Assembly: GCA_010909165.1 (NCBI GenBank)
Contig: VJWM01000116.1
Coordinates: forward strand, 1-64,000
Source of the DNA: Anthoceros angustus
Taxonomy: Eukaryota; Plantae; Anthocerotophyta
Reading direction: 5' to 3'
DNA: 64,000 nt
Shown here one piece after another: positions 3,732 to 59,319 of this stretch. Position 1 is the stretch's first letter, and every line of letters starts with the position of its first letter. The notes under the pieces are model-generated. The model was not told where the DNA came from, did no database searches, and saw only the letters and a program-made list of their open reading frames with translations. The translations under genes and the position numbers were made by a program.

Positions 3732-4562
3732 TTACAATTTCCTTACTGCGGGGTTAGCCTTTGGTCCTTGGGAAGAGCCTTCACCTCCCTTCCTACTTTG
3801 CCAATTCCTGTTCCTCATTTGTCTCTGTCCGTTAGAGCGTGAGGTGAAGAGGGCTTGCCCTGGAGCTGCACTCTTGGAGGAGGCCCTTGCAGAGTCTTCC
3901 TCGATAATAGCAGCGATGACCTCCGAGAGAGTCATGAGTTCTCCCAGGTTAAGTTTCTTCGCGTGTGCGGATTGCTTCATAAGGCCATTCTGGGTTGCAA
4001 CGAATGTTCTCCAACTTGGGGGCAGGGTCATCAGGAGGGCTATGGCCGCCTGATCCTCTGTCAAGGTAGTCCCGCAGGAAGCCAATCTTGCTCTCAGTGT
4101 GCGGAAGTTGCTGAGATGTGCCTGGATGCTTTCCCCATCCTTATATTTAAGGTTGTGAAAATTCCGTAAAGCAGTTGCAGAGTGTTGAGCGTCTGTGGCT
4201 TCGAACATTTGGGTGAAGCGTTCCCAGATGGCTTGTGCAGTGAGGGCACCGAAGGTATGGTGAACCATATCTTTGTCCAGGCCAGCGATTAGGAGGTTTC
4301 GGGCTCTTCTGTCCGATTTTGTCCACTGATCATAGTCCGGGGTTCCACTTGCTGGGCAGGGCACCGACCCATTGACTATTGTCCAGAGGTCGGCGTCTTC
4401 AAGATGTCCCTGCATTTGAGTAGCCCAGACATCGTAGTCTACTCCTGTAAACCTGTCCTTTTCCTTGATTTCGATCCGGTGGGTTGTGAAGTGTTGGTTG
4501 ATAGGGTTTACGGCGCCACCACCAGTGGCACCACCACCACCACCGCCAGCAGCAGCGGCCAT
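3732..4562 (-). CDS. Copia gag (UBN2-type), truncated at the zinc knuckle
   Basis: 276-aa ORF with the typical Copia gag pattern (F.G.DY..W...M...L....LW..V.G; LLMTLPPSW), downstream of the PBS. Confidence 0.85.
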   Translation of the reverse strand: MAAAAGGGGGGATGGGAVNPINQHFTTHRIEIKEKDRFTGVDYDVWATQMQGHLEDADLWTIVNGSVPCPASGTPDYDQWTKSDRRARNLLIAGLDKDMVHHTFGALTAQAIWERFTQMFEATDAQHSATALRNFHNLKYKDGESIQAHLSNFRTLRARLASCGTTLTEDQAAIALLMTLPPSWRTFVATQNGLMKQSAHAKKLNLGELMTLSEVIAAIIEEDSARASSKSAAPGQALFTSRSNGQRQMRNRNWQSRKGGEGSSQGPKANPAVRKL

Positions 4563-47415: not shown

Positions 47416-49978
47416 TCACCGTATGAATTCGTCCACCATCTCCTGGTACATGCCTGGGAGGAACCGCTTCCCCATATTTCTCACCAGCTCCACCGAGCTC
47501 GGAAACCTGGCTATCATCTTGCCATCTTTAAACACATGCAAGTCCCGAGTATACTGCCCTACGACCTGTCTGGCGCTACTCTTGTGCTTGGTTGCGAGTG
47601 TGAATATTGCTGACCACCTAATCTGGTAGTCAACCAACCTCCTCACATTTGTCAAGTTGTCACAGCAACGATAGTAAGTGAGAAGTGCATAACCCACGGA
47701 TGCGAAGTAGGCTACGATTTCCTCATCTGGAATGTTGGTCTTCGGCCCAAGTGAGTTCGGACGACTCTTCCGAGGAGTGAGTATCCCACGTTTCTTCAAC
47801 TTGTCTGTTATTTCCTCCATCGAGGCCAATACCTGTAGAGGAATAGTATCACGGTACTTGTTTCGCCTTTGAGCTCTCACCTTGTTGCTCACCCTGGGGG
47901 TGACAGCGGCTAATTCAGCTTCAGCCCTATCTTCCTCGTCCAAAAAGTCCTGCATCACCTGCGTCAAATTTTCATGAGCCTCCAATATCTCCTCCGGGAT
48001 TCCAAGCCAGGAAACCTTCATCATGTCCACCTTCTCCTTTTCCAGAAGCTCCAGAACTGTTTGCTTACTTTCACCTGCTTCAAGTTTCTCCAGGGCATAA
48101 TTTGTGACGATCTCCCTTGCTTTCTTGTGCAGGACGTGTTGTGCTTCCATGCTAGAAGCAACAGTTGACCTGACCTTCTTGAAAGCCCTTGCCCAGGCAA
48201 GCAGGATAAGATTCCTCATCTGGATATCCCAGCTCTCTTGTCGCTGCTTTGCAAACTGCTTGAGACGAGCCTTCACGCGCCGACGCTTCTCCATCCCCTT
48301 TGCATACCGTCTCATTCCTTTGGACTCCGGGAGCCCGGCAACTCGCATCCCGAGAAACCTTACGTGCCCACTGGTCACATGCACAAGATGGTCCAACTGG
48401 GCGTCTAGATGGAGATCTCTTTTGACAAAGTCCTGAATCTTGTGCTGGATATCCTTCATTAAAGGTTTTGGCCCAGTGAAACCAACCAGAAACTCGTCAC
48501 CGTAACGAAGGTATCTTATCCTCACTTCTGCATCCCCCTTCCGATAACTATACCCCTCATCTGCCTCTGATTCTGAGTCATCTGAAGCCTCGTCTTCCTG
48601 ATCATGAGTGTCCTCCTGAAAGTCATCCATGTCCCGACTATATTCATACTCTTTTTGCAACTTCAAGACTTCTTGATCGAGCTTGTCCAAATAGACATTG
48701 CAAAGAGCCTTCATAAGTATACTGCCTCTTGGGAATCCGGTCTCAGGTGGGGGATCCTTCAGTTCATGGCAGACACGCGCCTCCATCTGATACAGTCTCA
48801 GCACCAAATCAACAAACCGTTGGTCTTCTATCTGCTCCTCCAGAACACGACGAAGCTGCTGTCGATTCATCTGTTCGTAACACTTCCTGATGTCATATTT
48901 CATGAAGAAATTTATCCCCCTCCACTTCTTCTTCATTTGCAGCATGACAGAGTGGCAACCCTTGGATGGACGAAAGCCATGGGAGTAGTCAGAGAAGTGT
49001 GGCTCGTACACTCTGCTCAAAGCCATACTAGCTGCCTTTGCAAGCAGCTTCTCACTTGGGTCAACTAAAGACCACGATCTGCCCGGAATCCTCACAAACT
49101 CAAATGGTCCCTCTAGCAGAACTCCACCAAGTCCCATCCTGTCTTCTCTTGATTCGGCAGCAACTACCTCCATTTTGCACAGCCTCACTACCTCCATCAG
49201 GTTCTCATATTTGCCACTAGGTCCACGAGGTAACCTTGCCATGCGCACAGCCTCATCATCCATCTGGTCCATCATTTCATCCTGTACAGATACCAAGCCT
49301 CCCGTGCCATCAGCCTCTGCCTTCTCGATCATGTCATCCTGCACATGAATGAAGCCCGACGAGCTATCAGCCTCAGGATGTGACTCCGAAACAAAATCCA
49401 CCTCCTCCTCGGGTTCAGGCAACCAAGCTGACCTCCAAGTCGACCCTGTATCCAAAACACAACACGTGAGAGAGCACCACACAAGGAAGCATCTCCACAA
49501 TTGAATCCCACTGCCAAGAACCCGTTTTCTCCCAACGCAGCATTCAAAACCCACCTGAGCACCACCTCCTCGGCTCAATCATACGCGACACACCCTCGCC
49601 AGGCCTAAATTGCCCGATGCCAACTGGCATTTTCAAAGGCCAGCAGCCATCCGCTGTGAGAGCTGAACGTGACAGCGCGCATTTGAATGCAGCACCTGCT
49701 AATGTGAGCTCACCAGGCTGCCCTGCCCCCATCTGTACGACACAAGAGACACCACCAAAACATGAGACCACCACAATCCCGTGCCGAGAACGTGATCCAG
49801 GCCCTAACAAACGCACCTCCAGAGCAGCGGGCTCACGAGATTCTGCCGATGTCCATCGCAAAGGACGATTGCCGTCCAGCCATGGTAATGCACCAGAAGC
49901 CCGTTTCAGCAGAATGTCCCACGCATTGATCACACCACCCCTCACAGCAACACCCGCTGCAACTGACCTCCTTCCCAT
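47416..49978 (-). CDS. matR: Nuclear-encoded MatR-type group II intron maturase (RT + domain X), predicted 789 aa; exons 49978-49817, 49732-49555, 49445-47416
   Basis: YEPHFSDYSHGFRP..GCHS, DIRKC, NVYLDKLDQE, YLRYGDEFLVG, VRFLG, EKRRRVK and domain X YYRCCDNL..VR..VD.QIRWSAIFTLATKHKSSAR match plant mitochondrial MatR; a GT-AG intron at 49446-49554 joins the upstream ORF in frame; probable 84-bp intron at 49733-49816. Confidence 0.88.
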
Positions 49979-50090
49979 CTCCCCAATGCCCTCTTCCGCA
50001 TGAGCATTACATCACAATACATACATGCCGTAACCCACGCGGAGCAAACAGCAATCAAAGGACTCGATTGTCAGGTTCCACAACGAGGTG

Positions 50091-50105
50091 TTAAACCCTA
50101 AACCC
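50091..50105. promoter_or_regulatory. Telo-box (AAACCCTA) in the shared divergent intergenic region
   Basis: TTAAACCCTAAACCC about 115 bp upstream of the matR-like ATG. Confidence 0.4.
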
Positions 50106-50713
50106 AACCGCCCTCCCGTGAGACCTGTAGAACGAGAAACCTCCCATGATACATCATGGAGTATCATGGGAGGTGTCATGGGCTCCCTGGTATGCAGTAC
50201 ATACATACATACCAGGGTGACTGAAAGTTACTCAACCCCGCTTGTATTGTCCTCCAGTTGAATTCCGTACCGTGGGCGTTAAAAGCTTTATTTAGCAAAC
50301 GTCAGGAACGGCGGAATTATATTTTATATTTTACAAGATGAAATCTAACAATTCTAACCCCGCTTCCTATTCCTTTTTTAGGGGGGAAGGGGTCCGCAAG
50401 CACACGGCTTGTCATCTCGGCATTGGCAGGCGTTTGTAACGTTCCTCCCAGCAATCCACGCGGTTCTGGTGCGGTTCAAACCGAGGCTGTTCTGCAACAG
50501 CTGGCCTGGCCGGAGAGAGCGAGGCGAAGGCGCGACCTGGTTGAAGCTTCCTGGTTGAATGACAGAAGGGGCAAGATTTTTGTGTGTCAGGCACGGTGTG
50601 CGAGTCAGGCTCGGAGCGCGGGACGGGCACAGCCGAGTGCTGAAAGCCGGAATGCCAGATATCATGGTGGTGAATGCAAGGGCGTAGCGCTGAGAGCCTT
50701 CAACTGCGAGGAG

Positions 50714-51973
50714 ATGACGAAGGGAAGCTCCCCGATCCGGGAGTTGAAGGACTTCAAGGACGTCCTGACCGGAGCTTCTCCGGAATACGAGTTGGTGCAT
50801 CCTTCGGGAGGCTGCGGGGAGGCCAGGAAGTACTTCAACTCCAAGGCTGCCGCCGTTCTTCTCGTCATTGCAGTGGTTGTGGTGCTGGCCGTGGTGATAC
50901 CGCTGGCGGTGGTTTTGCCTCGGCGTGGAGGTGGTTCCAGCCTTAGTGTGAACAGCGGGGGCGGCGGGGGTGGCGTTGGCGGTGGCGTTTCTCCCGCTGC
51001 GCAACCGCCTGCGAGCGCTGTGCAGCAGGTGTCGGATCTGATCAAGTTGGCCTGTAATGGCAGTTTGTACCAGGAATCGTGCGTTCAGTCCTTGTCTGCA
51101 TACCCTGGCGGGAATAACGCGACCTTGAGGGATCTGGTGGAGATAGGGCTTTTGATTGCCAAGGCGCAGAGTGAAGCGGGGTGGCAGGCTGCAACCGCTT
51201 TTTTGACTAAGGGTTCTGGTGGTGGAAGTCCGGTGCTCGTTGGTGCGTTGCAAGACTGTGCTCAGCTTATGGAAAGCTCGTTAGGCGGCTTGAATACGTC
51301 GATCGGGATCTACAGCAATTTGAGTACGGTGGCTGCGCTAGCGGTGAATGAGTTAGACGACATGAACCAGCAGCTGAGTGCCAGCGAGACTGACATTGAC
51401 ACATGTTATGAAAGTTTGAAGGAAATGGGGGACTCCCAGATTGGTGATCAATTTCTTCAGCTTTCTGACACTGCGAAACGGATGATCAGTGATGCATTGC
51501 ATCTGACCAACTACTTGAAGGGGACTTTGGACGAACCTGATGATGAATCTGCTGATCCGCCTGTGCCCAACCGACGTCTGCTCTCGATAAGTCCAGGTCT
51601 GAGATCCTGGAGTCTTCGATTTCCCAGCGTTTTGAGATTACCGGCGACCGAGGTTGAGGAGAGGGCTGTTGAGAACGTGTTGGTGTCAGGGAGAGGGGAA
51701 AGGGCAGATTCGGGTCATGCAGACTCTCAGAAGGTGGTGCCTTGCGTCCTGAACTGCTTCAGAGCGGATCCTGTGTGTGGTGAAGACGGAGTGACGTATT
51801 GGTGTGGCGTGGCTGATGCCAAGTGCGCTGGAGTTGAGGTGGCACATTCTGGATTCTGTAATTTCCAAAATGGAGCAGGTGGGAAAGGGTCCATGGCACA
51901 GCAATCTTTGCTTCTAGTACACCTCCTCTGGCTGTTCTTTGCAGGGCTGCTTGTCCTTATTGAACTACCATGA
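50714..51973 (+). CDS. Chimeric membrane protein: N-terminal TM + PMEI/invertase-inhibitor domain + RRLL site + Kazal-type serine protease inhibitor + C-terminal hydrophobic anchor (419 aa, intronless)
   Basis: TM VLLVIAVVVVLAVVIPLAVV; IKLACNGSLYQESC...ALQDCAQL...LSASETDIDTCYESL; RRLL at 51572-51583; CVLNCFRADPVCGEDGVTYWCGVADAKCAGVEVAHSGFC; SLLLVHLLWLFFAGLLVL. Confidence 0.85.
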   Translation: MTKGSSPIRELKDFKDVLTGASPEYELVHPSGGCGEARKYFNSKAAAVLLVIAVVVVLAVVIPLAVVLPRRGGGSSLSVNSGGGGGGVGGGVSPAAQPPASAVQQVSDLIKLACNGSLYQESCVQSLSAYPGGNNATLRDLVEIGLLIAKAQSEAGWQAATAFLTKGSGGGSPVLVGALQDCAQLMESSLGGLNTSIGIYSNLSTVAALAVNELDDMNQQLSASETDIDTCYESLKEMGDSQIGDQFLQLSDTAKRMISDALHLTNYLKGTLDEPDDESADPPVPNRRLLSISPGLRSWSLRFPSVLRLPATEVEERAVENVLVSGRGERADSGHADSQKVVPCVLNCFRADPVCGEDGVTYWCGVADAKCAGVEVAHSGFCNFQNGAGGKGSMAQQSLLLVHLLWLFFAGLLVLIELP

Positions 51974-52605
51974 GCTCTACATCAGCCTACTTGTTAAGCT
52001 GACATGCAGGTGCTGATTTTTAGATGGTTGCCTGTTTTGCTTCTAGGTCGTTGAGGCTTGCCAAAAGTTGACAGTTAATCATGGACCCAAGGCTAGGGAT
52101 GCAATAAGCCCTGAAATCCTTAGGGCAGATGGTTTTCATTATTCATTTTGCGAGATCAGGCAGTCTGACAATGTATTTGTACGAGATGTTTGTGAGCAGA
52201 CAAAGCAGATATTATTTCTGGGAACTTCTCATTGCTCATGGTTTCTTCCACGCCTGAGATTTCACATCGCACATTGTTTCTTCCACTCCTGAGATTTCAC
52301 ATCGCACATGGTTTCCTCCAAACTCGAGTTTTGGATGGACTTTATTTCTCAGTTTCTTGTTCAGCGTAAGGACTGCAACCTGCCAACGCTCTGTAAACTC
52401 TTGGGTTTCTGATCTAAGTAAGCTGTATATAAACAAAATATAAAATACTTAATAATTACAAAGTATGTTATAAATATATTATAAGTATCAAATACCAGGG
52501 AGGATTTCCATGAACCTGTTTAGCGGTGTTCCGAGCAAAAAACAAGGGTTATGAATTCTCTTTCATTACAATCTAAGGCTTACACCTAACCCAAAACACT
52601 AGGAC

Positions 52606-53068
52606 CGTGTTTTCATCAGTATTTTGGAAAGTCCTCTAGATGTAGAGTTCAAAATCCAGCGTTTTCATCCGTATTTTGGAAAGTCCTCTAGATGTAGAGT
52701 TCAAAATCCAGCTATCCAGCTGTGCCAAATAGACACATATTTATAAGAACATCGTGATTAAGCATCCTGGATACACATTTATAAGAACATCGTGAATAAG
52801 CATCCTGCGCTTAGATGTACTTAGATGGGGTGCCTAAAGGGAGTGGATGCCCTTGGTGCAAGTAGCTTAGGCACACCATGGTACAAGTTGTTAAGTACCA
52901 AGTCCCATGACGGAAAATAGATCGGTACTTAGATGGGGTACCTAAAGGGAGTGGATGCCCTTGGTGCAAGTAGCTTGGGCACACCATGGTACAAGTTGTT
53001 AAGTACCAAGTCCCATGACGGAAATCCGTCCTTAGTGGACTTAAATAAAATTCTTCTTCTTCTTCTTC
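52606..53068 (+). mobile_element. SINE/LINE-type 3' end with three successive internal tandem duplications, stem-loop, AATAAA and (TTC)n tail
   Basis: Duplicated 52-bp, ~38-bp and ~108-bp blocks; ends GACGGAAATCCGTC..GGACTTAAATAAAATTCTTCTTCTTCTTC. Confidence 0.7.
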
Positions 53069-53842
53069 TATATTTACTGATGATAGAAATAAAGGATTCA
53101 ATGTTTTAGTATTTTATGGTCACTACATATATTAGTTAGCATACTTTCATGACATACGTTGTAACTTTTCAGCTTTAGAGATGTTTTTCTTAAAGAAGCT
53201 TGAAAGGCGCTTTTGCACAAAGCTGGAAAAGACAACTTGACTCTAGGGACTCAAGGAGCGAGAAAATTGACTCAAAAGTAACTTATCAGCGTCTTGACTT
53301 GACTCCAAAGTACAAGGAACAAGAAAATTGACTCAAAACAAGAAAATTGACTCAAAATCAAAATTGCCAATGGCCTGACTTGTATCTTATTATAGCAAAG
53401 CCACGACGAAAAAGGAAAAAAGTTAGTTAGGAGACCTAGGAGGCACTTATCTTTGGAGTGAGTCCTCCGAGCCCACTGTCCCACAGCCTGAAGGTTGCAC
53501 AGCTCCTCTATTTGATTGGTGGGGTGATTAAGATAGGTAAGCCACCAATGGAAAAATATCACATATTCTTTAAGAGAAGCCCGGAAGAGGAAAGTCGTTC
53601 ACCTTAACTTTCGTTCACCTTAGCTTACATATCTCTTATTTCTAGAATTTCAAAAATTCATAGCACTTTCTCAAAACACACCCTGTCTTTGTAGTTTTTT
53701 TTGACCCAAAAGTAGTTTTATTTTATGCTAAAAAGGTAATATTTTTATGCGTAATAAATACTCTTTTGAATTCCTCCATTGTTCGACCCACCTGAGCTCG
53801 CCTCCGCTCTTGTTCAAGAAAGGAAGCAGGTTCTTGGCTTCT

Positions 53843-54490
53843 GGCCCAACCTTGCATCCAGGCCTTTCGATTCACACCGGTGTAAATCGGAAGGCCTGGA
53901 TGCAAGGTTGGGCCTATCTCTAAGATGAGAGGACCAAGTCTCTATTGCAGATGTGGTTGTACCAAACCCTACTCGAGATACCATGTGCGAGCATGTTATC
54001 ATTAACCCTTTGGGTTGAGCAACATGGGGATGCGCTACAACCAAGGTTCACAAGTGCACCCCTATGCAGGAAGGCCATGCTTTCATCCCCCTTGCTAATG
54101 AGACTCATAGGGCCATGAGCAAGAACTTCTCAACGTTTATCAAGGCTTGTGCTAAAGCATACCACATCCACAAGAACGGTGTAGGTCTCCCTCTTTCTTG
54201 TATGGTGGCTTTCTTCCGGCCACGAGTATCGATTGCTCTGCAAATGGCGCTGGCAAATGCAATTTTCAGCACAACTTCGAATGCGGGGAATGTAGAATCT
54301 ACAGCTCTAGTGCGCCGTAAGTAGGCCCTTCCTTATTCTAGACTATGACATCTTGGGAGCGGTAGGTAACTTCAAAGTAGACATTCGGGGGGCCTAGTCC
54401 CTCTTTGCCTGGGGCCCTCTAGAGGGTTGTTCCCCATCGACTTGGTGTAGATGGGACTTCCTATCTAAAGTCTCCATGTTTCATTAATAG
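53843..54490 (+). mobile_element. 5'-truncated RLE-type (CRE-like) non-LTR retrotransposon fragment with a 72-bp foldback at its 5' end
   Basis: ADVVVPNPT...FIPLANET...FFRPRVSIALQ...ANAI resembles the C-terminal restriction-like endonuclease of CRE-clade elements; palindrome at 53843-53914. Confidence 0.6.
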
Positions 54491-54653
54491 ATATATATAA
54501 GATAAATATGTGAAACATCAAGTATAGAAACCTATTGATATTCTATTTTTCGTTTTCTAGCTATATATAACGATACAACCGCTATAGGTGAGCACATCAA
54601 CTTAAGTGAAGTGTTTGGCCATTGAGGAAACGAAAGTAGTGAGCGTATCAAAA

Positions 54654-55925
54654 ATGGTCGTACAACTTCCAAACCACCTGTGGAAAGAGATTTTATCATG
54701 CTTACCATGCCTCAACTTGGTTCAAGTGAGGTCAGTGTGCAAACAGTGGAACAAGGAAGCTGCGATGTTGCTAGCCAAGCCTAGGCAGCCCTGGTGCCTT
54801 TGCTGCTACTGGAAGCCCTCATTTTTTAATTCCATCCTAATGGCCTTTGACTCCGTCACATTTAAATGGTTTGAGATGTCAATGCCTTTTACGGTAGATC
54901 ACTCATTACGGTGGTTGACTTTGCATCCCAGCAATGGATACTCTGGGTTAGTGCTTTTGACCCGGAGAAATCCACATGAGGAGTTGTGGGTGGGGAATCC
55001 GGTGAAAGGCAAGTGGCGAAAGCTACTAACCAACAACGAGATTGGGATGCAAGAGGCCAGGCTGGCGACGACATTCCACAACTTGATCGTCAACGAGCAA
55101 AGCAAGTCGTATAAGATTGTGAAGTTTAGCATCACGCGAGAGCTAGAGGCACAGTTCCAATTCAAGAGCAATTGGACTACAGAAGTTTATGAGTCTGAGA
55201 CTGGCCGATGGAGACCAGGGGCTTCTTGTATGACCACTGAAGTAATGATAGAAAATTGCTTGGAAAATTACAACAAGTGTGAGTCACATGGCGTCATCTA
55301 CTTCCTCCTGAAGAAAGGACATCGTGATACTTGGCTATTAACTCCTTTTGCACAGCGGGTGAGCATCATGAGCTACAATATAGAGTTGGACAAGTTCAAC
55401 ATCGTCCTGGAGGCAGCTCCATTACAACGCAATTCCTGGATGACCAAGAGCAACCTCTTCTTTTACTCTCTCGAGCCCTTCATCGTCGAAAGTGAACACG
55501 AGGTCACGAGAAGGATTCAAATTGTGGCAAGACTATGGTCCTCTCATCTTTGGAGGCATGAAGCCTCCATATTAGCTTCTAGCAACAACCTGTGCGTGAT
55601 GAGATATGAGCCTCACAAGAATGCTTGGGTCCTAGTTGATGACTCCCAATTCACGATTTCCCCAAGCCTAGATGCCTCCACCTCCACCTGGCCCTCGCAA
55701 TCGGAGAAGCCTCTCTCACATGGTCTTTTCTACACTTCCTTCATGAATTATCAATATTCCCCCTATGGCTATAGCCACACGCATTCTAGTGAGGTTATCA
55801 TGTACGAGCCTCACAACAAGAAATGGACTCAACTGCCTTGTCCAAACAAGGTGCTATACAATATGGAGAAGACCTTGTTCTTTTCCACATATTCCTTCAT
55901 ACCACGCCTAGATGTAGATCCGTAA
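54654..55925 (+). CDS. F-box protein with F-box-associated (kelch/FBA-like) C-terminus, intronless, 423 aa
   Basis: LPNHLWKEILSCLPCLNLVQVRSVCKQW; VGNPVKGKWRKL; TEVYESETGRW; C-terminal FIPRLDVDP. Confidence 0.92.
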   Translation: MVVQLPNHLWKEILSCLPCLNLVQVRSVCKQWNKEAAMLLAKPRQPWCLCCYWKPSFFNSILMAFDSVTFKWFEMSMPFTVDHSLRWLTLHPSNGYSGLVLLTRRNPHEELWVGNPVKGKWRKLLTNNEIGMQEARLATTFHNLIVNEQSKSYKIVKFSITRELEAQFQFKSNWTTEVYESETGRWRPGASCMTTEVMIENCLENYNKCESHGVIYFLLKKGHRDTWLLTPFAQRVSIMSYNIELDKFNIVLEAAPLQRNSWMTKSNLFFYSLEPFIVESEHEVTRRIQIVARLWSSHLWRHEASILASSNNLCVMRYEPHKNAWVLVDDSQFTISPSLDASTSTWPSQSEKPLSHGLFYTSFMNYQYSPYGYSHTHSSEVIMYEPHNKKWTQLPCPNKVLYNMEKTLFFSTYSFIPRLDVDP

Positions 55926-57534: not shown

Positions 57535-59319
57535 ATGTTTTTGCGGGGAGGCCGGTGCAGTACCAGCGGCGGCGTCGCCGGGGTGCGCCGACTGGAGTGC
57601 GGGAAGCTTGTTTTTGTCGTGGCAGTGATGGTGGCGGCTACCTGTGCCTGGTTGTCGCTCGTGTTCCATCCGAAGAATCACTGCTCGCATCCGCACCGGC
57701 GGGGGGACTGGGAGGCCCCGCCGTCCTCGTCCTTGCTAGATCCTCGGAGCTCCAAGGAGCCGACTCTGGATTTCAATCCTGGCTCGTTTCCTGTGGCCAG
57801 GTCGCCGCCGGGGGCGCTCGGGACGGGGGGGAGCCAGCTGTCGCTGCAAAATGTGGTGTTTGGAATTGGCGGATCTGCGCAGCTGTGGCAGCAGCGGAAG
57901 GAATTTATTAAGCTATGGTGGAGGGCCGGGGAGATGCGAGGATTCGTGTGGCTGGAGGAGAAAGTGAAGGGTATCCCGGGGGAGTTGCTGCCGCAGGTTA
58001 TGGTGTCGGAGGACACTTCCAGGTTCAGCTACACGCATCCCCATGGACATCCGTCGGGAATCCGGATCTCGCGGATCATATCGGAGACTTTTAGATTAGG
58101 CCTGCCGGATGTGCAGTGGTTCGTCATGGGGGACGATGATACCATTTTCTGCCCGGACAACCTGTTGCGGGTGCTCAGCAAGTATGATCCCAGTCAGATG
58201 TACTACATCGGTAGCTCTTCCGAGAGCCATCGGCAGAACACCGATTTCAGCAACAAGATGGCTTACGGCGGGGGAGGATTCGCCATCAGCTATCCCTTGG
58301 CTGCTGCTATTGCGGACATGCAGGATGACTGTCTGGAGCGGTATCCAGAACTGTTTGGAAGCGATGATCGCCTTCAAGCGTGTATTGCCGAGCTCGGTGT
58401 GCCCCTGACCAAGGAAGCCGGGTTCCATCAGGTGTGACTTCTGTCTCTATGATACGGATTTGTTCCCGCTGTCACTGTAGCACGCAGCCTGACTCTGACT
58501 CTGACTCTGACTCTGACTCTGACCCTGACCCTGACCCTGACCCTGATGATTTGTTGTTCGTCTGTAACAGTTCGATATTTATGGGAACGCGTTCGGGCTT
58601 CTTTCCGCTCACCCGACTGCACCTTTTGTTTCCCTCCATCATGTGGAACTTATTGATCCAGTTTTCCCGGGGTACAGCACGTTGGATAGTCTGAAGCTTC
58701 TCACACAGGCTATGCAAGTAGACCCGTCCAGTTTCTTGCAACAGTCAATAACCTATGATAAGAGCCGATCGTTGTCCTACTCCATTTCCTTGGGCTATGC
58801 GGTACAGATTTTTCCTAACATTATTCTACCGAGAGAGCTAGAGAGGCCTGAGATCACCTTCAGGGCTTGGAATCAGTTAGAGAATCCCTTTGAATTTAGT
58901 ATGGACGGTCGCCCTGGTATCAGGGGAGTTTGTAAGCTTCCTTACGTTTTCTTCATGGAGATGGTGGAGTACGAGGAGGATACGGGTACTGTGATGAGCA
59001 TCTACAGACGTCACCGTCCTGTGGACGAGAGGAAGAAAGGCTCCATTTGCTGGTCAAGCATGTATCCCCCAGAGAAGCTGGAGTCTGTGCGTGTTCGGCA
59101 TATACCATTGACTGTTCAATGGTCCAAGGTGAGCACTCTCAGTCTTGCCTGCATTCGTGTCATGCACTGAAATGATGGGATTTGGTTACACTTGCTCACA
59201 AGTCTTGCTTGACCTCTGTTCAGGTTCCGAGAAGGCAATGCGCCCAGTTGGTAGGTTTGAAGGACAAGGTGCTGGATATATTGGTCCGACCATGTAAAGA
59301 AGGAGAAACAGCATATTAG
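57535..59319 (+). CDS. DUF604 / Fringe-like (GT31-related) glycosyltransferase, 516 aa; exons 57535-58431, 58571-59128, 59224-59319
   Basis: N-terminal TM; VVFGIGGS..LW..RK; WFVMGDDDT; YYIGSSSESH.QN; MAYGGGGFAISYPLA; GSDDRL..C.AELGVPLT.E.GFHQ; canonical GT-AG introns keep the frame. Confidence 0.95.
58489..58546. repeat. Intronic hexamer microsatellite (CTGACT)n(CTGACC)n
   Basis: Directly visible. Confidence 0.95.

What the first reader, a model, noticed from the sequence alone, without database searches (positions are those of the whole stretch)
50714..51973. PME pro-region fused to a Kazal protease inhibitor: candidate dual brake on pectin methylesterase activation
Seen: one intact, intronless ORF with the layout of a group-2 PME pro-region (cytosolic tail, TM, four-Cys PMEI domain, RRLL). 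Where the PME catalytic domain should follow, there is instead a complete plant Kazal inhibitor (LRLP..., CFRADPVCGEDGVTYWCG, C-terminal hydrophobic anchor). Known: RRLL-type motifs in pro-PMEs are cut by subtilases to release the enzyme; Kazal domains inhibit serine proteases including subtilisin-like ones; plant Kazal proteins are normally small stand-alone proteins. Inference: subtilase cleavage would free a membrane-tethered PMEI and a Kazal inhibitor. This would be a bait-and-inhibit feedback module acting on both PME and its activating protease. I do not know of this architecture having been described.
Basis: partly seen in the sequence, partly recalled or inferred. Interest (0 to 1): 0.85.

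Follow-up and report, generated by a model that had tools for sequence, protein, structure and literature searches.

The report
PME pro-region fused to Kazal inhibitor
A land plant, probably a hornwort, has an intact and transcribed gene in which the membrane-anchored inhibitor-like front half of a pectin methylesterase precursor, cleavage motif included, carries a plant Kazal-type protease inhibitor instead of the enzyme; I found this domain combination in no other protein.

Summary
Window 50714-51973 (+) is one uninterrupted 419-codon ORF.

- **Layout:** cytosolic tail, TM helix (42-67), PMEI domain (Pfam E 4.6e-19; predicted fold matches solved PMEIs), a disordered linker with RRLL (287-290), then a complete plant Kazal-like module.
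- **RRLL motif:** it aligns column for column with the first processing motif of group-2 pro-PMEs.
- **Kazal module:** it starts at the family's mature N-terminus (SVLRLP, 305-310). It has six Cys, a CFRADPVCG loop and a GPI-signal-like tail.
- **No catalytic domain:** no PME catalytic remnant exists in the window.
- **Transcription:** in a run that splices the neighbouring gene, one contig lies colinear on 50608-52459 with no mismatch. Two related organisms carry contigs about 93% identical across both domains. Their CDS indels are 3 and 9 nt, and 12 of the 15 listed CDS substitutions are synonymous.
- **Rarity:** an exhaustive search of 1.84 billion representatives found PMEI relatives and Kazal relatives, but no protein with both.

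I favour a simpler reading: the pro-region is a targeting and release module for a GPI-anchored Kazal inhibitor. This is a new domain combination of two known families and of moderate interest.

The parts
50608..52459 (+). Extent of the unspliced transcript contig, made up of the 5' leader, the CDS and a 3' UTR of about 486 nt
   Evidence: Run X1 record 2 (1852 nt) lies colinear on it with 0 mismatches and 0 gaps. The bins on either side have no depth.
50652..50687 (+). Upstream ORF of 11 codons in the 5' leader. A further out-of-frame ATG lies at 50674.
   Evidence: Read from the sequence. None of the listed differences to the relatives falls in these ATG triplets.
50714..51973 (+). Coding sequence of 419 codons plus stop, without introns
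50714..50836 (+). N-terminal cytosolic tail, residues 1-41
   Evidence: Aligns with the N-terminal tails of group-2 PMEs. It lies before the TM helix.
50837..50914 (+). Transmembrane signal-anchor helix, residues 42-67
   Evidence: Kyte-Doolittle peak up to 3.46; helix 42-67 in the model
50915..51034 (+). Gly/Pro/Ala-rich spacer, residues 68-107
   Evidence: Read from the sequence; low pLDDT. The relatives carry 3-nt and 9-nt in-frame indels at 50852 and 50953; 50953 lies in this spacer, 50852 in the TM helix part just before it.
51035..51532 (+). PMEI-like (PRO) domain, residues 108-273, with Cys 114, 123, 182 and 231
   Evidence: Pfam PF04043, E 4.6e-19. Helical bundle with pLDDT 84-98. Foldseek top hits are 1XG2_B, 1X91 and 1RJ1, with target-normalised TM 0.81-0.86.
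51572..51583 (+). RRLL motif, residues 287-290, in a predicted disordered linker
   Evidence: Aligns with the first processing motif of group-2 PMEs. The linker 284-343 has pLDDT below 50.
51611..51625 (+). Fusion junction, residues 300-304 (SLRFP), between the last PME-like motif (PGLRSW, resembling FPxW) and the first Kazal-family motif
   Evidence: Alignments A1 and A2
51626..51643 (+). SVLRLP, residues 305-310, the conserved motif at the mature N-terminus of the plant Kazal-like family
   Evidence: The same motif follows the signal peptide in angiosperm members.
51743..51859 (+). Kazal core, residues 344-382, with six Cys (344, 348, 355, 364, 371, 382). The inferred P1 is R350 (51761-51763).
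51869..51970 (+). GPI-attachment-signal-like tail, residues 386-419: small residues NGAGG, a short spacer, then a 21-residue hydrophobic end
   Evidence: Conserved across the family. Hydropathy peak at 404-410. The family member At3g61980 is listed among predicted Arabidopsis GPI-anchored proteins (PMC6726743).
51941..52024 (+). 84-nt segment (last 10 codons, stop and start of the 3' UTR) that is absent from the transcripts of the two related organisms
   Evidence: Joint 51940>52025 in X3 and X7, and 51940>52031 in X2. If their letters match the window's, the deduced alternative tail is WLPVLLLGR*.

Best explanation
This is a real, expressed chimeric gene of a non-seed land plant, probably a hornwort. 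The 5' part of a group-2 pectin methylesterase gene encodes a cytosolic tail, a signal-anchor TM helix, the PMEI-like PRO domain, the RRLL processing motif and a vestige of the FPxW motif. That part has been joined to the mature part of a plant Kazal-type (AtKPI-like) gene, exactly where the Kazal protein's own signal peptide would have ended.

The likely course is as follows. The TM helix inserts the protein into the ER as a type-II membrane protein. The C-terminal signal is exchanged for a GPI anchor. The PRO domain plays the part it plays in pro-PMEs, escorting and retaining the cargo until processing. A subtilase of the S1P/SBT type then cuts at RRLL in the exposed linker. This would release a GPI-anchored Kazal inhibitor at the cell surface, where it would inhibit subtilisin- or elastase-like serine proteases, and would leave a membrane-tethered PMEI-like domain behind.

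Shown here: the intact ORF, one mRNA contig across both parts, presence with the frame kept in two related organisms, domain and motif homology, and the predicted folds. Inferred only: GPI anchoring, cleavage at RRLL, protease inhibition, and any action on PME.
For: - **ORF and domains:**
- **PME side:** RRLL and PGLRSW align with the processing and FPxW motifs of PMEs from Wollemia, Diphasiastrum and others; the stand-alone PMEIs in the alignment stop earlier.
- **Kazal side:** family homology starts at SVLRLP, directly after where family members have their signal peptide. There is no Met or hydrophobic stretch that could give the Kazal part its own entry into the secretory pathway.
- **Conservation:** every column that is invariant in the family alignment is kept, namely 17 Kazal-family columns and the four PMEI Cys.
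- **Transcription:** run X1 has a single 1852-nt contig on 50608-52459 with 0 differences. The same run skips two introns with GT..AG ends (read on the minus strand) in the neighbouring gene, so it is RNA. X2, X3 and X7, from two other organisms, carry contigs about 93% identical across the junction, with only 3-nt and 9-nt indels in the CDS.
- **Selection:** 12 synonymous against 3 conservative replacements among the 15 listed CDS differences.
- **Folds:** PMEI bundle with pLDDT 84-98 and a disordered linker around RRLL. Kazal core with block-mean pLDDT 79-94; the top PDB matches are LDTI, infestin, rhodniin and silk inhibitor.
- **Literature:** AtKPI-1 inhibits subtilisin and elastase (bioRxiv 10.1101/2025.11.28.691165). 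At3g61980 is listed among predicted GPI-anchored proteins (PMC6726743). PRO regions are separated from PME by subtilases (PMC8990755).
Against: - No protein-level data exist.
- Cleavage, GPI anchoring and inhibitory activity are all inferred from relatives.
- The contigs are assemblies, not single molecules, and the runs are labelled RNA only by guess. Splicing of the neighbouring gene supports that label.
- Substitutions in the relatives are known only for the first 420 nt of the CDS, so an internal stop in their Kazal part cannot be excluded.
- The PMEI domain scores lower against Pfam (69 bits) than its relatives do (95-127 bits), so it may have drifted from PME binding.
- Pfam's own Kazal models do not reach threshold.
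- Three upstream ATGs in the leader could limit translation.
- The relatives have a different, shorter C-terminal tail.
Confidence: 0.6

Rival explanations
1. After cleavage, the Kazal module inhibits the very subtilase that processes RRLL sites, including those of pro-PMEs, while the tethered PMEI domain inhibits mature PME. The gene would then damp PME activation at two levels.
For: All the parts are present and conserved. The family member AtKPI-1 inhibits subtilisin. Subtilases activate pro-PMEs at such motifs. The fusion of two otherwise separate families hints at a functional link between them.
Against: No evidence shows that plant Kazal proteins inhibit plant subtilases of the S1P/SBT type, nor that PRO-type PMEI domains inhibit PMEs in trans. 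In Calypogeia and Sphagnum the stand-alone Kazal genes have no PME or PMEI neighbour. The fusion is found only in one narrow lineage. The complex prediction was not run.
Confidence: 0.17
2. The protein is not cleaved and works as one surface protein held at both ends, by an N-terminal TM helix and a C-terminal GPI anchor or TM helix. It would present a PMEI-like and a Kazal-like domain together at the membrane-wall interface, for example as a wall sensor or scaffold.
For: Both hydrophobic ends are conserved. Only one RRLL is present, whereas the consensus of the PME pro-regions aligned here shows a second R-x-LL motif further on. The FPxW motif is degenerate.
Against: RRLL is kept at exactly the homologous position in an exposed, disordered linker. 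Positional conservation of a cleavage motif with no function would be unexpected.
Confidence: 0.12
3. This is a young, lineage-specific chimera that is transcribed but has no selected function, that is, neutral domain shuffling on the way to decay.
For: It is restricted to close relatives. The leader carries upstream ATGs. The relatives have lost the canonical C-terminal tail through an 84-nt deletion. The Pfam PMEI score is lower than that of relatives.
Against: Indels are in frame, and substitutions run 12 synonymous to 3 replacements. All family-invariant residues of both domains are retained. Contigs are present in runs from eight studies. The 5' leader differs more than the CDS does, at about 11% against 7%.
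Confidence: 0.08
4. This is an artefact: a mis-assembly, or two neighbouring genes read as one.
For: Contigs cannot prove a single molecule (caveat).
Against: Independent contigs from three organisms span the junction colinearly. There is no stop, no start and no signal peptide between the halves. The junction is only about 5 residues wide between two homologous motifs.
Confidence: 0.03

Closest known systems
Group-2 (type I) pro-pectin methylesterases (PMEI-like PRO region + processing motif + Pectinesterase domain)
   Same: N-terminal cytosolic tail, signal-anchor TM helix, four-Cys PMEI/PRO domain, RRLL at the homologous position, and a vestige of the FPxW motif. The best full-length relatives of the N-terminal half include PMEs from Diphasiastrum and Wollemia.
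   Different: It has no Pectinesterase (PF01095) domain at all, neither in the ORF nor as a remnant nearby. The cargo is a protease inhibitor, and only one processing motif is present.
Plant Kazal-type family proteins (AtKPI-1/At3g61980, AtKPI-2; PTHR-type 'serine protease inhibitor, Kazal-type family protein')
   Same: The whole mature protein is present: SVLRLP motif, variable acidic spacer, six-Cys core with the CFRADPVCG loop (identical to that of Brassicaceae members), Gly-rich omega region and hydrophobic tail. Identity is 50-63% to bryophyte and lycophyte members.
   Different: Family members are stand-alone proteins of 100-310 aa with their own signal peptide. None of the 98 single-module members fetched here has a PMEI domain. 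Here the signal peptide is replaced by about 300 residues of PME pro-region.
Stand-alone membrane-anchored PMEIs (for example Cunninghamia PMEI2 and Ginkgo Gb_01420)
   Same: TM helix, Pro/Gly-rich spacer and PMEI domain. These are the highest-scoring relatives of the N-terminal half, at about 30% identity.
   Different: They end directly after the PMEI domain, with no RRLL and no further domain.
Non-classical animal Kazal inhibitors (LDTI, infestin, rhodniin, Galleria SPI2)
   Same: Same fold and Cys framework. The PVCGxDGxTY signature is shared, and the model superposes on them at rmsd 0.9-1.4 A over 34-36 residues.
   Different: The plant loop between Cys2 and Cys3 is one residue shorter than in LDTI (my count; the LDTI sequence is from memory). 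The module has a plant-specific YWCG motif and a C-terminal membrane-anchor signal. Pfam's Kazal models score it below threshold.

Membership tests
PMEI / invertase inhibitor superfamily (PF04043) | Match to the family profile above the curated threshold | tested here: met
   69.5 bits against a cut-off of 29; E 4.6e-19; profile positions 1-155 of 156
PMEI / invertase inhibitor superfamily (PF04043) | Four conserved Cys (two disulfides) and a four-helix bundle with an N-terminal helical hairpin | tested here: met
   C114, C123, C182 and C231 are invariant. Helices at 108-114, 120-129, 138-167, 173-201, 207-236 and 242-273, with pLDDT 84-98. Foldseek hit 1XG2_B, E 1.7e-5, target-normalised TM 0.86.
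PMEI / invertase inhibitor superfamily (PF04043) | Inhibits PME (or invertase) | not testable with these tools
   Needs an enzyme assay.
Group-2 pro-PME | N-terminal TM or signal anchor followed by a PRO (PMEI-like) region | tested here: met
Group-2 pro-PME | Basic processing motif (RRLL/RKLL) after the PRO region | tested here: met
   NRRLLS aligns in register with the motif in seven of the nine aligned relatives: six PMEs or PME fragments and the PMEI-only fragment P0133.
Group-2 pro-PME | C-terminal Pectinesterase catalytic domain (PF01095) | tested here: not met
   No Pfam hit. tblastn with four PMEs matches only the PRO part. It is therefore not a PME.
Kazal-type serine protease inhibitor domain | Match to Pfam Kazal_1 or Kazal_2 above the curated threshold | tested here: not met
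   13.1 and 13.0 bits against cut-offs of 21 and 22.8; only 11-13 residues aligned
Kazal-type serine protease inhibitor domain | Six-Cys framework with the PVCGxDGxTY signature, and homology to bona fide Kazal domains | tested here: met
   Cys 344, 348, 355, 364, 371 and 382. phmmer E 2.6e-39 to a protein with seven or eight Pfam-verified Kazal repeats. Family profile against PDB: LDTI at 4.6e-5, elastase inhibitor at 2.4e-4, infestin at 1.1e-3.
Kazal-type serine protease inhibitor domain | Kazal fold (short beta-hairpin, alpha-helix, beta-strand) | tested here: met
   The AF2 core has block-mean pLDDT 79-94. The top 50 Foldseek PDB hits are almost all Kazal or follistatin-type domains, with probability up to 1.00 and target-normalised TM 0.71-0.78 for LDTI and SPI2. 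E-values are weak (at least 0.03) because the domain is small.
Kazal-type serine protease inhibitor domain | Canonical inhibition of a serine protease through the reactive-site loop | not testable with these tools
The only support is the literature on AtKPI-1.
Plant Kazal-like (AtKPI) family | Sequence homology over the whole mature protein, including the xRLP motif and the C-terminal hydrophobic tail | tested here: met
   E 1e-18 to 9e-27 to 16 named plant proteins. All 17 columns that are invariant in the family alignment are kept.
Plant Kazal-like (AtKPI) family | Own N-terminal signal peptide; a small stand-alone protein | tested here: not met
   The signal peptide is replaced by the PME pro-region.
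GPI-anchored proteins | C-terminal signal: small omega residues, a short polar spacer, a hydrophobic tail and no cytosolic extension | tested here: inconclusive
   The pattern NGAGG-KGSMAQQS-L(21 hydrophobic) fits by eye and by hydropathy. No GPI predictor was available. A family member is listed among predicted Arabidopsis GPI-anchored proteins.

The most novel reading that the evidence does not exclude
The fusion is a 'Rosetta stone'. On this reading, the enigmatic plant Kazal (KPI) family works in the same pathway as pro-PME processing, as endogenous cell-surface inhibitors of the subtilases that cut RRLL/RKLL motifs. In this lineage a single precursor is both substrate and inhibitor of that protease, and it also delivers a tethered PMEI. 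That would make it a self-limiting switch on pectin de-esterification.
Probability: 0.15. Interest if true: 0.75.

Novelty: new variant of a known kind. Interest (0 to 1): 0.55.

Why it matters
Plant Kazal-type proteins are conserved from bryophytes to angiosperms, yet their physiological targets are unknown. Only one member has been assayed in vitro, and it inhibited subtilisin and elastase. How pro-PME processing by subtilases is controlled is also an open question.

This gene puts a Kazal inhibitor in the place of the PME, behind a conserved subtilase-type cleavage motif. It is transcribed and conserved. That yields a concrete, testable hypothesis linking the two systems.

It also shows that the PME pro-region can act as a portable module for another cargo, combining targeting, retention and release. 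If the link is real, it would point to endogenous regulation of wall-modifying proteolysis by Kazal proteins. If not, it remains a clean example of lineage-specific domain shuffling among secreted inhibitor families.

Tried and rejected
- **Whole-protein word-indexed search:** it returned one hit only. The exhaustive search replaced it.
- **Exact-sequence look-up:** the protein is not on record.
- **ESM Atlas feature search:** no usable hit.
- **Combined alignment A4:** MAFFT stacked the PMEI rows on the Kazal region, so I discarded it. I folded the full protein with PMEI rows only (A5). As a result the Kazal part of that model is unreliable, and the separate model from A3 is used instead.
- **Complex prediction, Kazal core with subtilisin Carlsberg:** not folded. 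The tool does not pair a eukaryote chain with a microbial one. This gives no evidence either way, and I made no further attempt.
- **Gene neighbourhoods:** I looked for a conserved gene neighbourhood that could explain the fusion. The stand-alone Kazal genes of Calypogeia and Sphagnum have no PME or PMEI neighbour.
- **Taxonomic placement via the neighbouring maturase:** uninformative. The best hit is 63% identical and unnamed. 'Hornwort' rests on earlier notes of this scan, on short introns and on GC content, not on a test of mine.
- **Other readings of the stretch:** antisense and out-of-frame ORFs over the gene have no Pfam hit, and there is no Rfam family in 50000-53500.
- **Literature:** no description of a PMEI-Kazal architecture.
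Full report

Yes. Window 50714-51973 (+) is an uninterrupted reading frame of 419 codons. The frame stays open upstream to 50423, but 50714 is the first in-frame ATG.

Pfam places a PMEI domain (PF04043) at residues 108-263, with E 4.6e-19 and almost full profile coverage. Hydropathy gives two strong peaks, at about 48-65 and 404-410.

A full-length AlphaFold model built on an alignment of PMEI and PME pro-region relatives gives this layout:

| Residues | Feature | pLDDT |
|---|---|---|
| 42-67 | TM helix | block means 74, 90, 69 |
| 108-273 | Helical hairpin plus four-helix bundle | 84-98 |
| 284-343 | Unstructured linker | below 50 |
| 395-416 | Terminal helix | block means 58, 86, 76 |

The best PDB matches of that model are the kiwi PMEI in its complex with PME (1XG2_B, target-normalised TM 0.86), Arabidopsis PMEI1 and the tobacco cell-wall invertase inhibitor.

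**2. The N-terminal half is a PME pro-region, not just a PMEI.**

I aligned it with the best relatives from the exhaustive search. These were PMEs of Wollemia and Diphasiastrum and several unnamed ones, all Pfam-verified as PMEI + Pectinesterase, together with stand-alone membrane-anchored PMEIs of Ginkgo and Cunninghamia.

- The four Cys (114, 123, 182, 231) are invariant.
- The window's P-N-R-R-L-L-S (RRLL = 287-290) falls in the same columns as the (N/S/T)RRLL(S/G/T) motif of the PMEs.
- The following PGLRSW aligns with their F/L-P-x-W motif.
- The stand-alone PMEIs end before this point.

RRLL/RKLL motifs and FPSW are the known processing-region motifs of pro-PMEs, and subtilases separate PRO from PME there (bioRxiv 10.1101/2022.07.28.501549; PMC8990755). 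tblastn with four PMEs matches only 51011-51610, so no catalytic-domain remnant exists anywhere in the 64 kb.

**3. The C-terminal third is a complete plant Kazal-type protein without its signal peptide.**

- Residues 337-418 are 63% identical to a stand-alone 230-aa protein of the liverwort Calypogeia.
- A search with residues 280-419 finds small proteins of 92-230 aa from Selaginella, Ceratodon, Ceratopteris and many angiosperms at E 1e-18 to 9e-27. Some of them are named Kazal-like or 'serine protease inhibitor, Kazal-type family'.
- In the family alignment the window keeps all 17 invariant columns. SVLRLP (305-310) matches the motif that directly follows the signal peptide in angiosperm members, for example SVLRLPS in two legumes.
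- The tail NGAGGKGSMAQQS + LLLVHLLWLFFAGLLVLIELP matches the family's C-terminal pattern.
- The junction between PME-derived and Kazal-derived sequence is therefore only about five residues wide (300-304).

Pfam's Kazal models score below threshold (13 bits), but three independent lines support the Kazal assignment:

- The exhaustive phmmer search ranks true multi-Kazal proteins at the top. One example is P0018, with seven or eight Pfam-verified Kazal repeats, at E 2.6e-39, matched at query residues 342-383.
- A profile of the plant family hits solved Kazal inhibitors: LDTI at 4.6e-5, an elastase inhibitor at 2.4e-4 and infestin at 1.1e-3.
- An AlphaFold model of the module has a confident core (block-mean pLDDT 79-94). 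Its best PDB matches are all Kazal or follistatin-type domains, including LDTI, silk protease inhibitor 2, infestin, rhodniin and ovomucoid. Probability reaches 1.00 and rmsd is about 1 A over 34-36 residues, although E-values are weak for so small a domain.

By position (Cys2 + 2), the P1 residue would be R350. This is an inference.

**4. Is it one gene, and is it expressed?**

The run search found one run (X1, organism A) holding 99% of the sampled words. It found many runs from eight studies holding about 20%.

Laid on 49000-54000, X1 gives one contig of 1852 nt, colinear with 50608-52459, with no mismatch and no gap. There is no depth in the bins on either side.

In the same run, the contig of the neighbouring gene skips 109 nt and 84 nt with CT..AC ends, which are GT..AG on the minus strand. 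The run therefore holds spliced RNA, and this gene is genuinely intronless.

Organisms B (X2) and C (X3, X7) have contigs 93-95% identical across the coding stretch up to 51940, through PMEI, RRLL, junction and Kazal core.

- The only indels inside the CDS are 3 nt and 9 nt.
- An 18-nt indel lies in the leader.
- Of the 15 CDS substitutions that the table lists (it shows only the first ~420 nt of the CDS), 12 are synonymous. The other 3 are Ser>Ala or Ser>Thr.
- The leader differs more than the CDS does, at about 11% against about 7%.

There is no Met, no hydrophobic stretch and no stop between the two halves. The Kazal part can therefore reach the secretory pathway only as part of the fusion.

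Caveats: contigs are not single molecules, the substitutions in the relatives' Kazal part were not displayed, and I could not retrieve their sequences.

**5. Is the architecture known?**

An exhaustive phmmer search of 1.84 billion representatives of about 15 billion proteins gave 331 hits. A fusion would score highest, yet none of the top 150 has both parts.

A local phmmer of each half against all 178 fetched proteins gave 15 N-half hits, 162 C-half hits and no overlap. Kazal-family members with long N-terminal extensions (304-321 aa) carry low-complexity sequence there, not PMEI.

No close orthologue of either half is in the database, so this organism's lineage is simply not represented there. 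Earlier notes of this scan call it a probable hornwort, which I did not test. The fusion is therefore absent from sampled liverworts, mosses, lycophytes, ferns and seed plants, but its spread within its own lineage is unknown beyond the three organisms.

Paper searches found no description. In Calypogeia and Sphagnum the stand-alone Kazal genes have no PME or PMEI neighbour, so a conserved gene pair is not the source.

**6. How it most likely works.**

Shown: an intact, transcribed, conserved gene with an N-terminal signal anchor, a PRO/PMEI domain, an RRLL motif in an exposed linker, a Kazal core and a C-terminal GPI-type signal.

From established knowledge:

- PRO regions escort type-I PMEs, and unprocessed forms are retained in the Golgi until subtilases cut the basic motif (Wolf et al. 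2009, cited in PMC8990755).
- The family member At3g61980 (AtKPI-1) is listed among predicted Arabidopsis GPI-anchored proteins (PMC6726743).
- Recombinant AtKPI-1 inhibits subtilisin and elastase strongly and trypsin weakly (Pariani et al. 2016, as reported in bioRxiv 10.1101/2025.11.28.691165).
- Brassicaceae family members share the identical CFRADPVCG loop with the window's protein.

Inference: the protein enters the ER as a type-II membrane protein, receives a GPI anchor and is cut at RRLL by an S1P/SBT-type subtilase. Cleavage would yield a GPI-anchored Kazal inhibitor at the cell surface and a tethered PMEI-like stub. The pro-region has in effect replaced the Kazal protein's signal peptide with a regulated targeting and release module.

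It holds that the Kazal part inhibits the processing subtilase and that the PMEI part brakes PME. I give it about 0.17, within a total of about 0.6 for the general processing model.

**7. Details and oddities.**

- The relatives lack 84 nt (51941-52024). This removes the last ten codons and the stop. If their flanking letters match the window's, their frame runs on into WLPVLLLGR*, which is still hydrophobic.
- The window's tail (AGLLVLIELP) matches the family consensus, so the relatives probably carry a deletion.
- The leader has three upstream ATGs: an 11-codon uORF at 50652-50687 (its ATGs at 50652 and 50664) and an out-of-frame ATG at 50674. None of them shows a listed difference in the relatives.

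**8. Verdict.**

This is a new combination of two known inhibitor families, found only in a narrow lineage. Its function rests on inference from the parts. Interest is moderate at 0.55: it gives a concrete handle on the unknown role of plant Kazal proteins and on the control of pro-PME processing, but nothing yet shows that the two halves cooperate.

Noticed in passing
window 50608-50713: The 5' leader of the fusion gene has three upstream ATGs. Two (50652 and 50664) lie in one 11-codon uORF that ends at 50687. The third, at 50674, opens an out-of-frame 90-codon ORF that overlaps the main start. None of the differences listed for the two related organisms touches these ATGs, although the leader is otherwise about 11% diverged. 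This may indicate translational control.
   Followed up: partly
window 51941-52024: An 84-nt segment covering the last 10 codons, the stop and the start of the 3' UTR is missing from the transcripts of both related organisms. They would end in a different but still hydrophobic tail. The window's version matches the family consensus.
   Followed up: partly
window 52768-53070: A short stretch downstream of the gene collects many partial contigs at very high summed depth in all four runs (up to about 3000 in X1). These contigs have loose ends running into unrelated sequence. It looks like a dispersed repeat or mobile-element fragment present in many transcripts.
   Followed up: no
window 47416-50140 (minus strand): The neighbouring gene has a 720-codon ORF with RVT_1 and Intron_maturas2 domains, so it is a nuclear maturase-like gene. 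It is spliced in run X1, with introns at 49445-49553 (109 nt) and 49733-49816 (84 nt). In organism C the second joint differs (49735-49856), with 38 other letters in between. Its best database relative is only 63% identical.
   Followed up: partly
window 54606-55925, 57535-58437, 3732-4562: Other ORFs in the window: an F-box protein with an At3g26010-like beta-propeller, a Fringe-like/DUF604 glycosyltransferase-like fragment in a stretch of 63% GC, and a copia-type gag ORF.
   Followed up: no
L001:10001-10693 and L002:10001-12486: The stand-alone Kazal-like gene of Calypogeia fissa is intronless, like the window's gene. The Sphagnum jensenii orthologue spans 2.5 kb for 167 codons, so it has introns.
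   Followed up: no
P0034, P0036, P0056 (protein ids): Some plant Kazal-like proteins of about 300 aa carry long Ser-rich, His/Gly-rich or Lys/Glu-rich low-complexity regions between the signal peptide and the Kazal core. The spacer of this family is highly variable.
   Followed up: no
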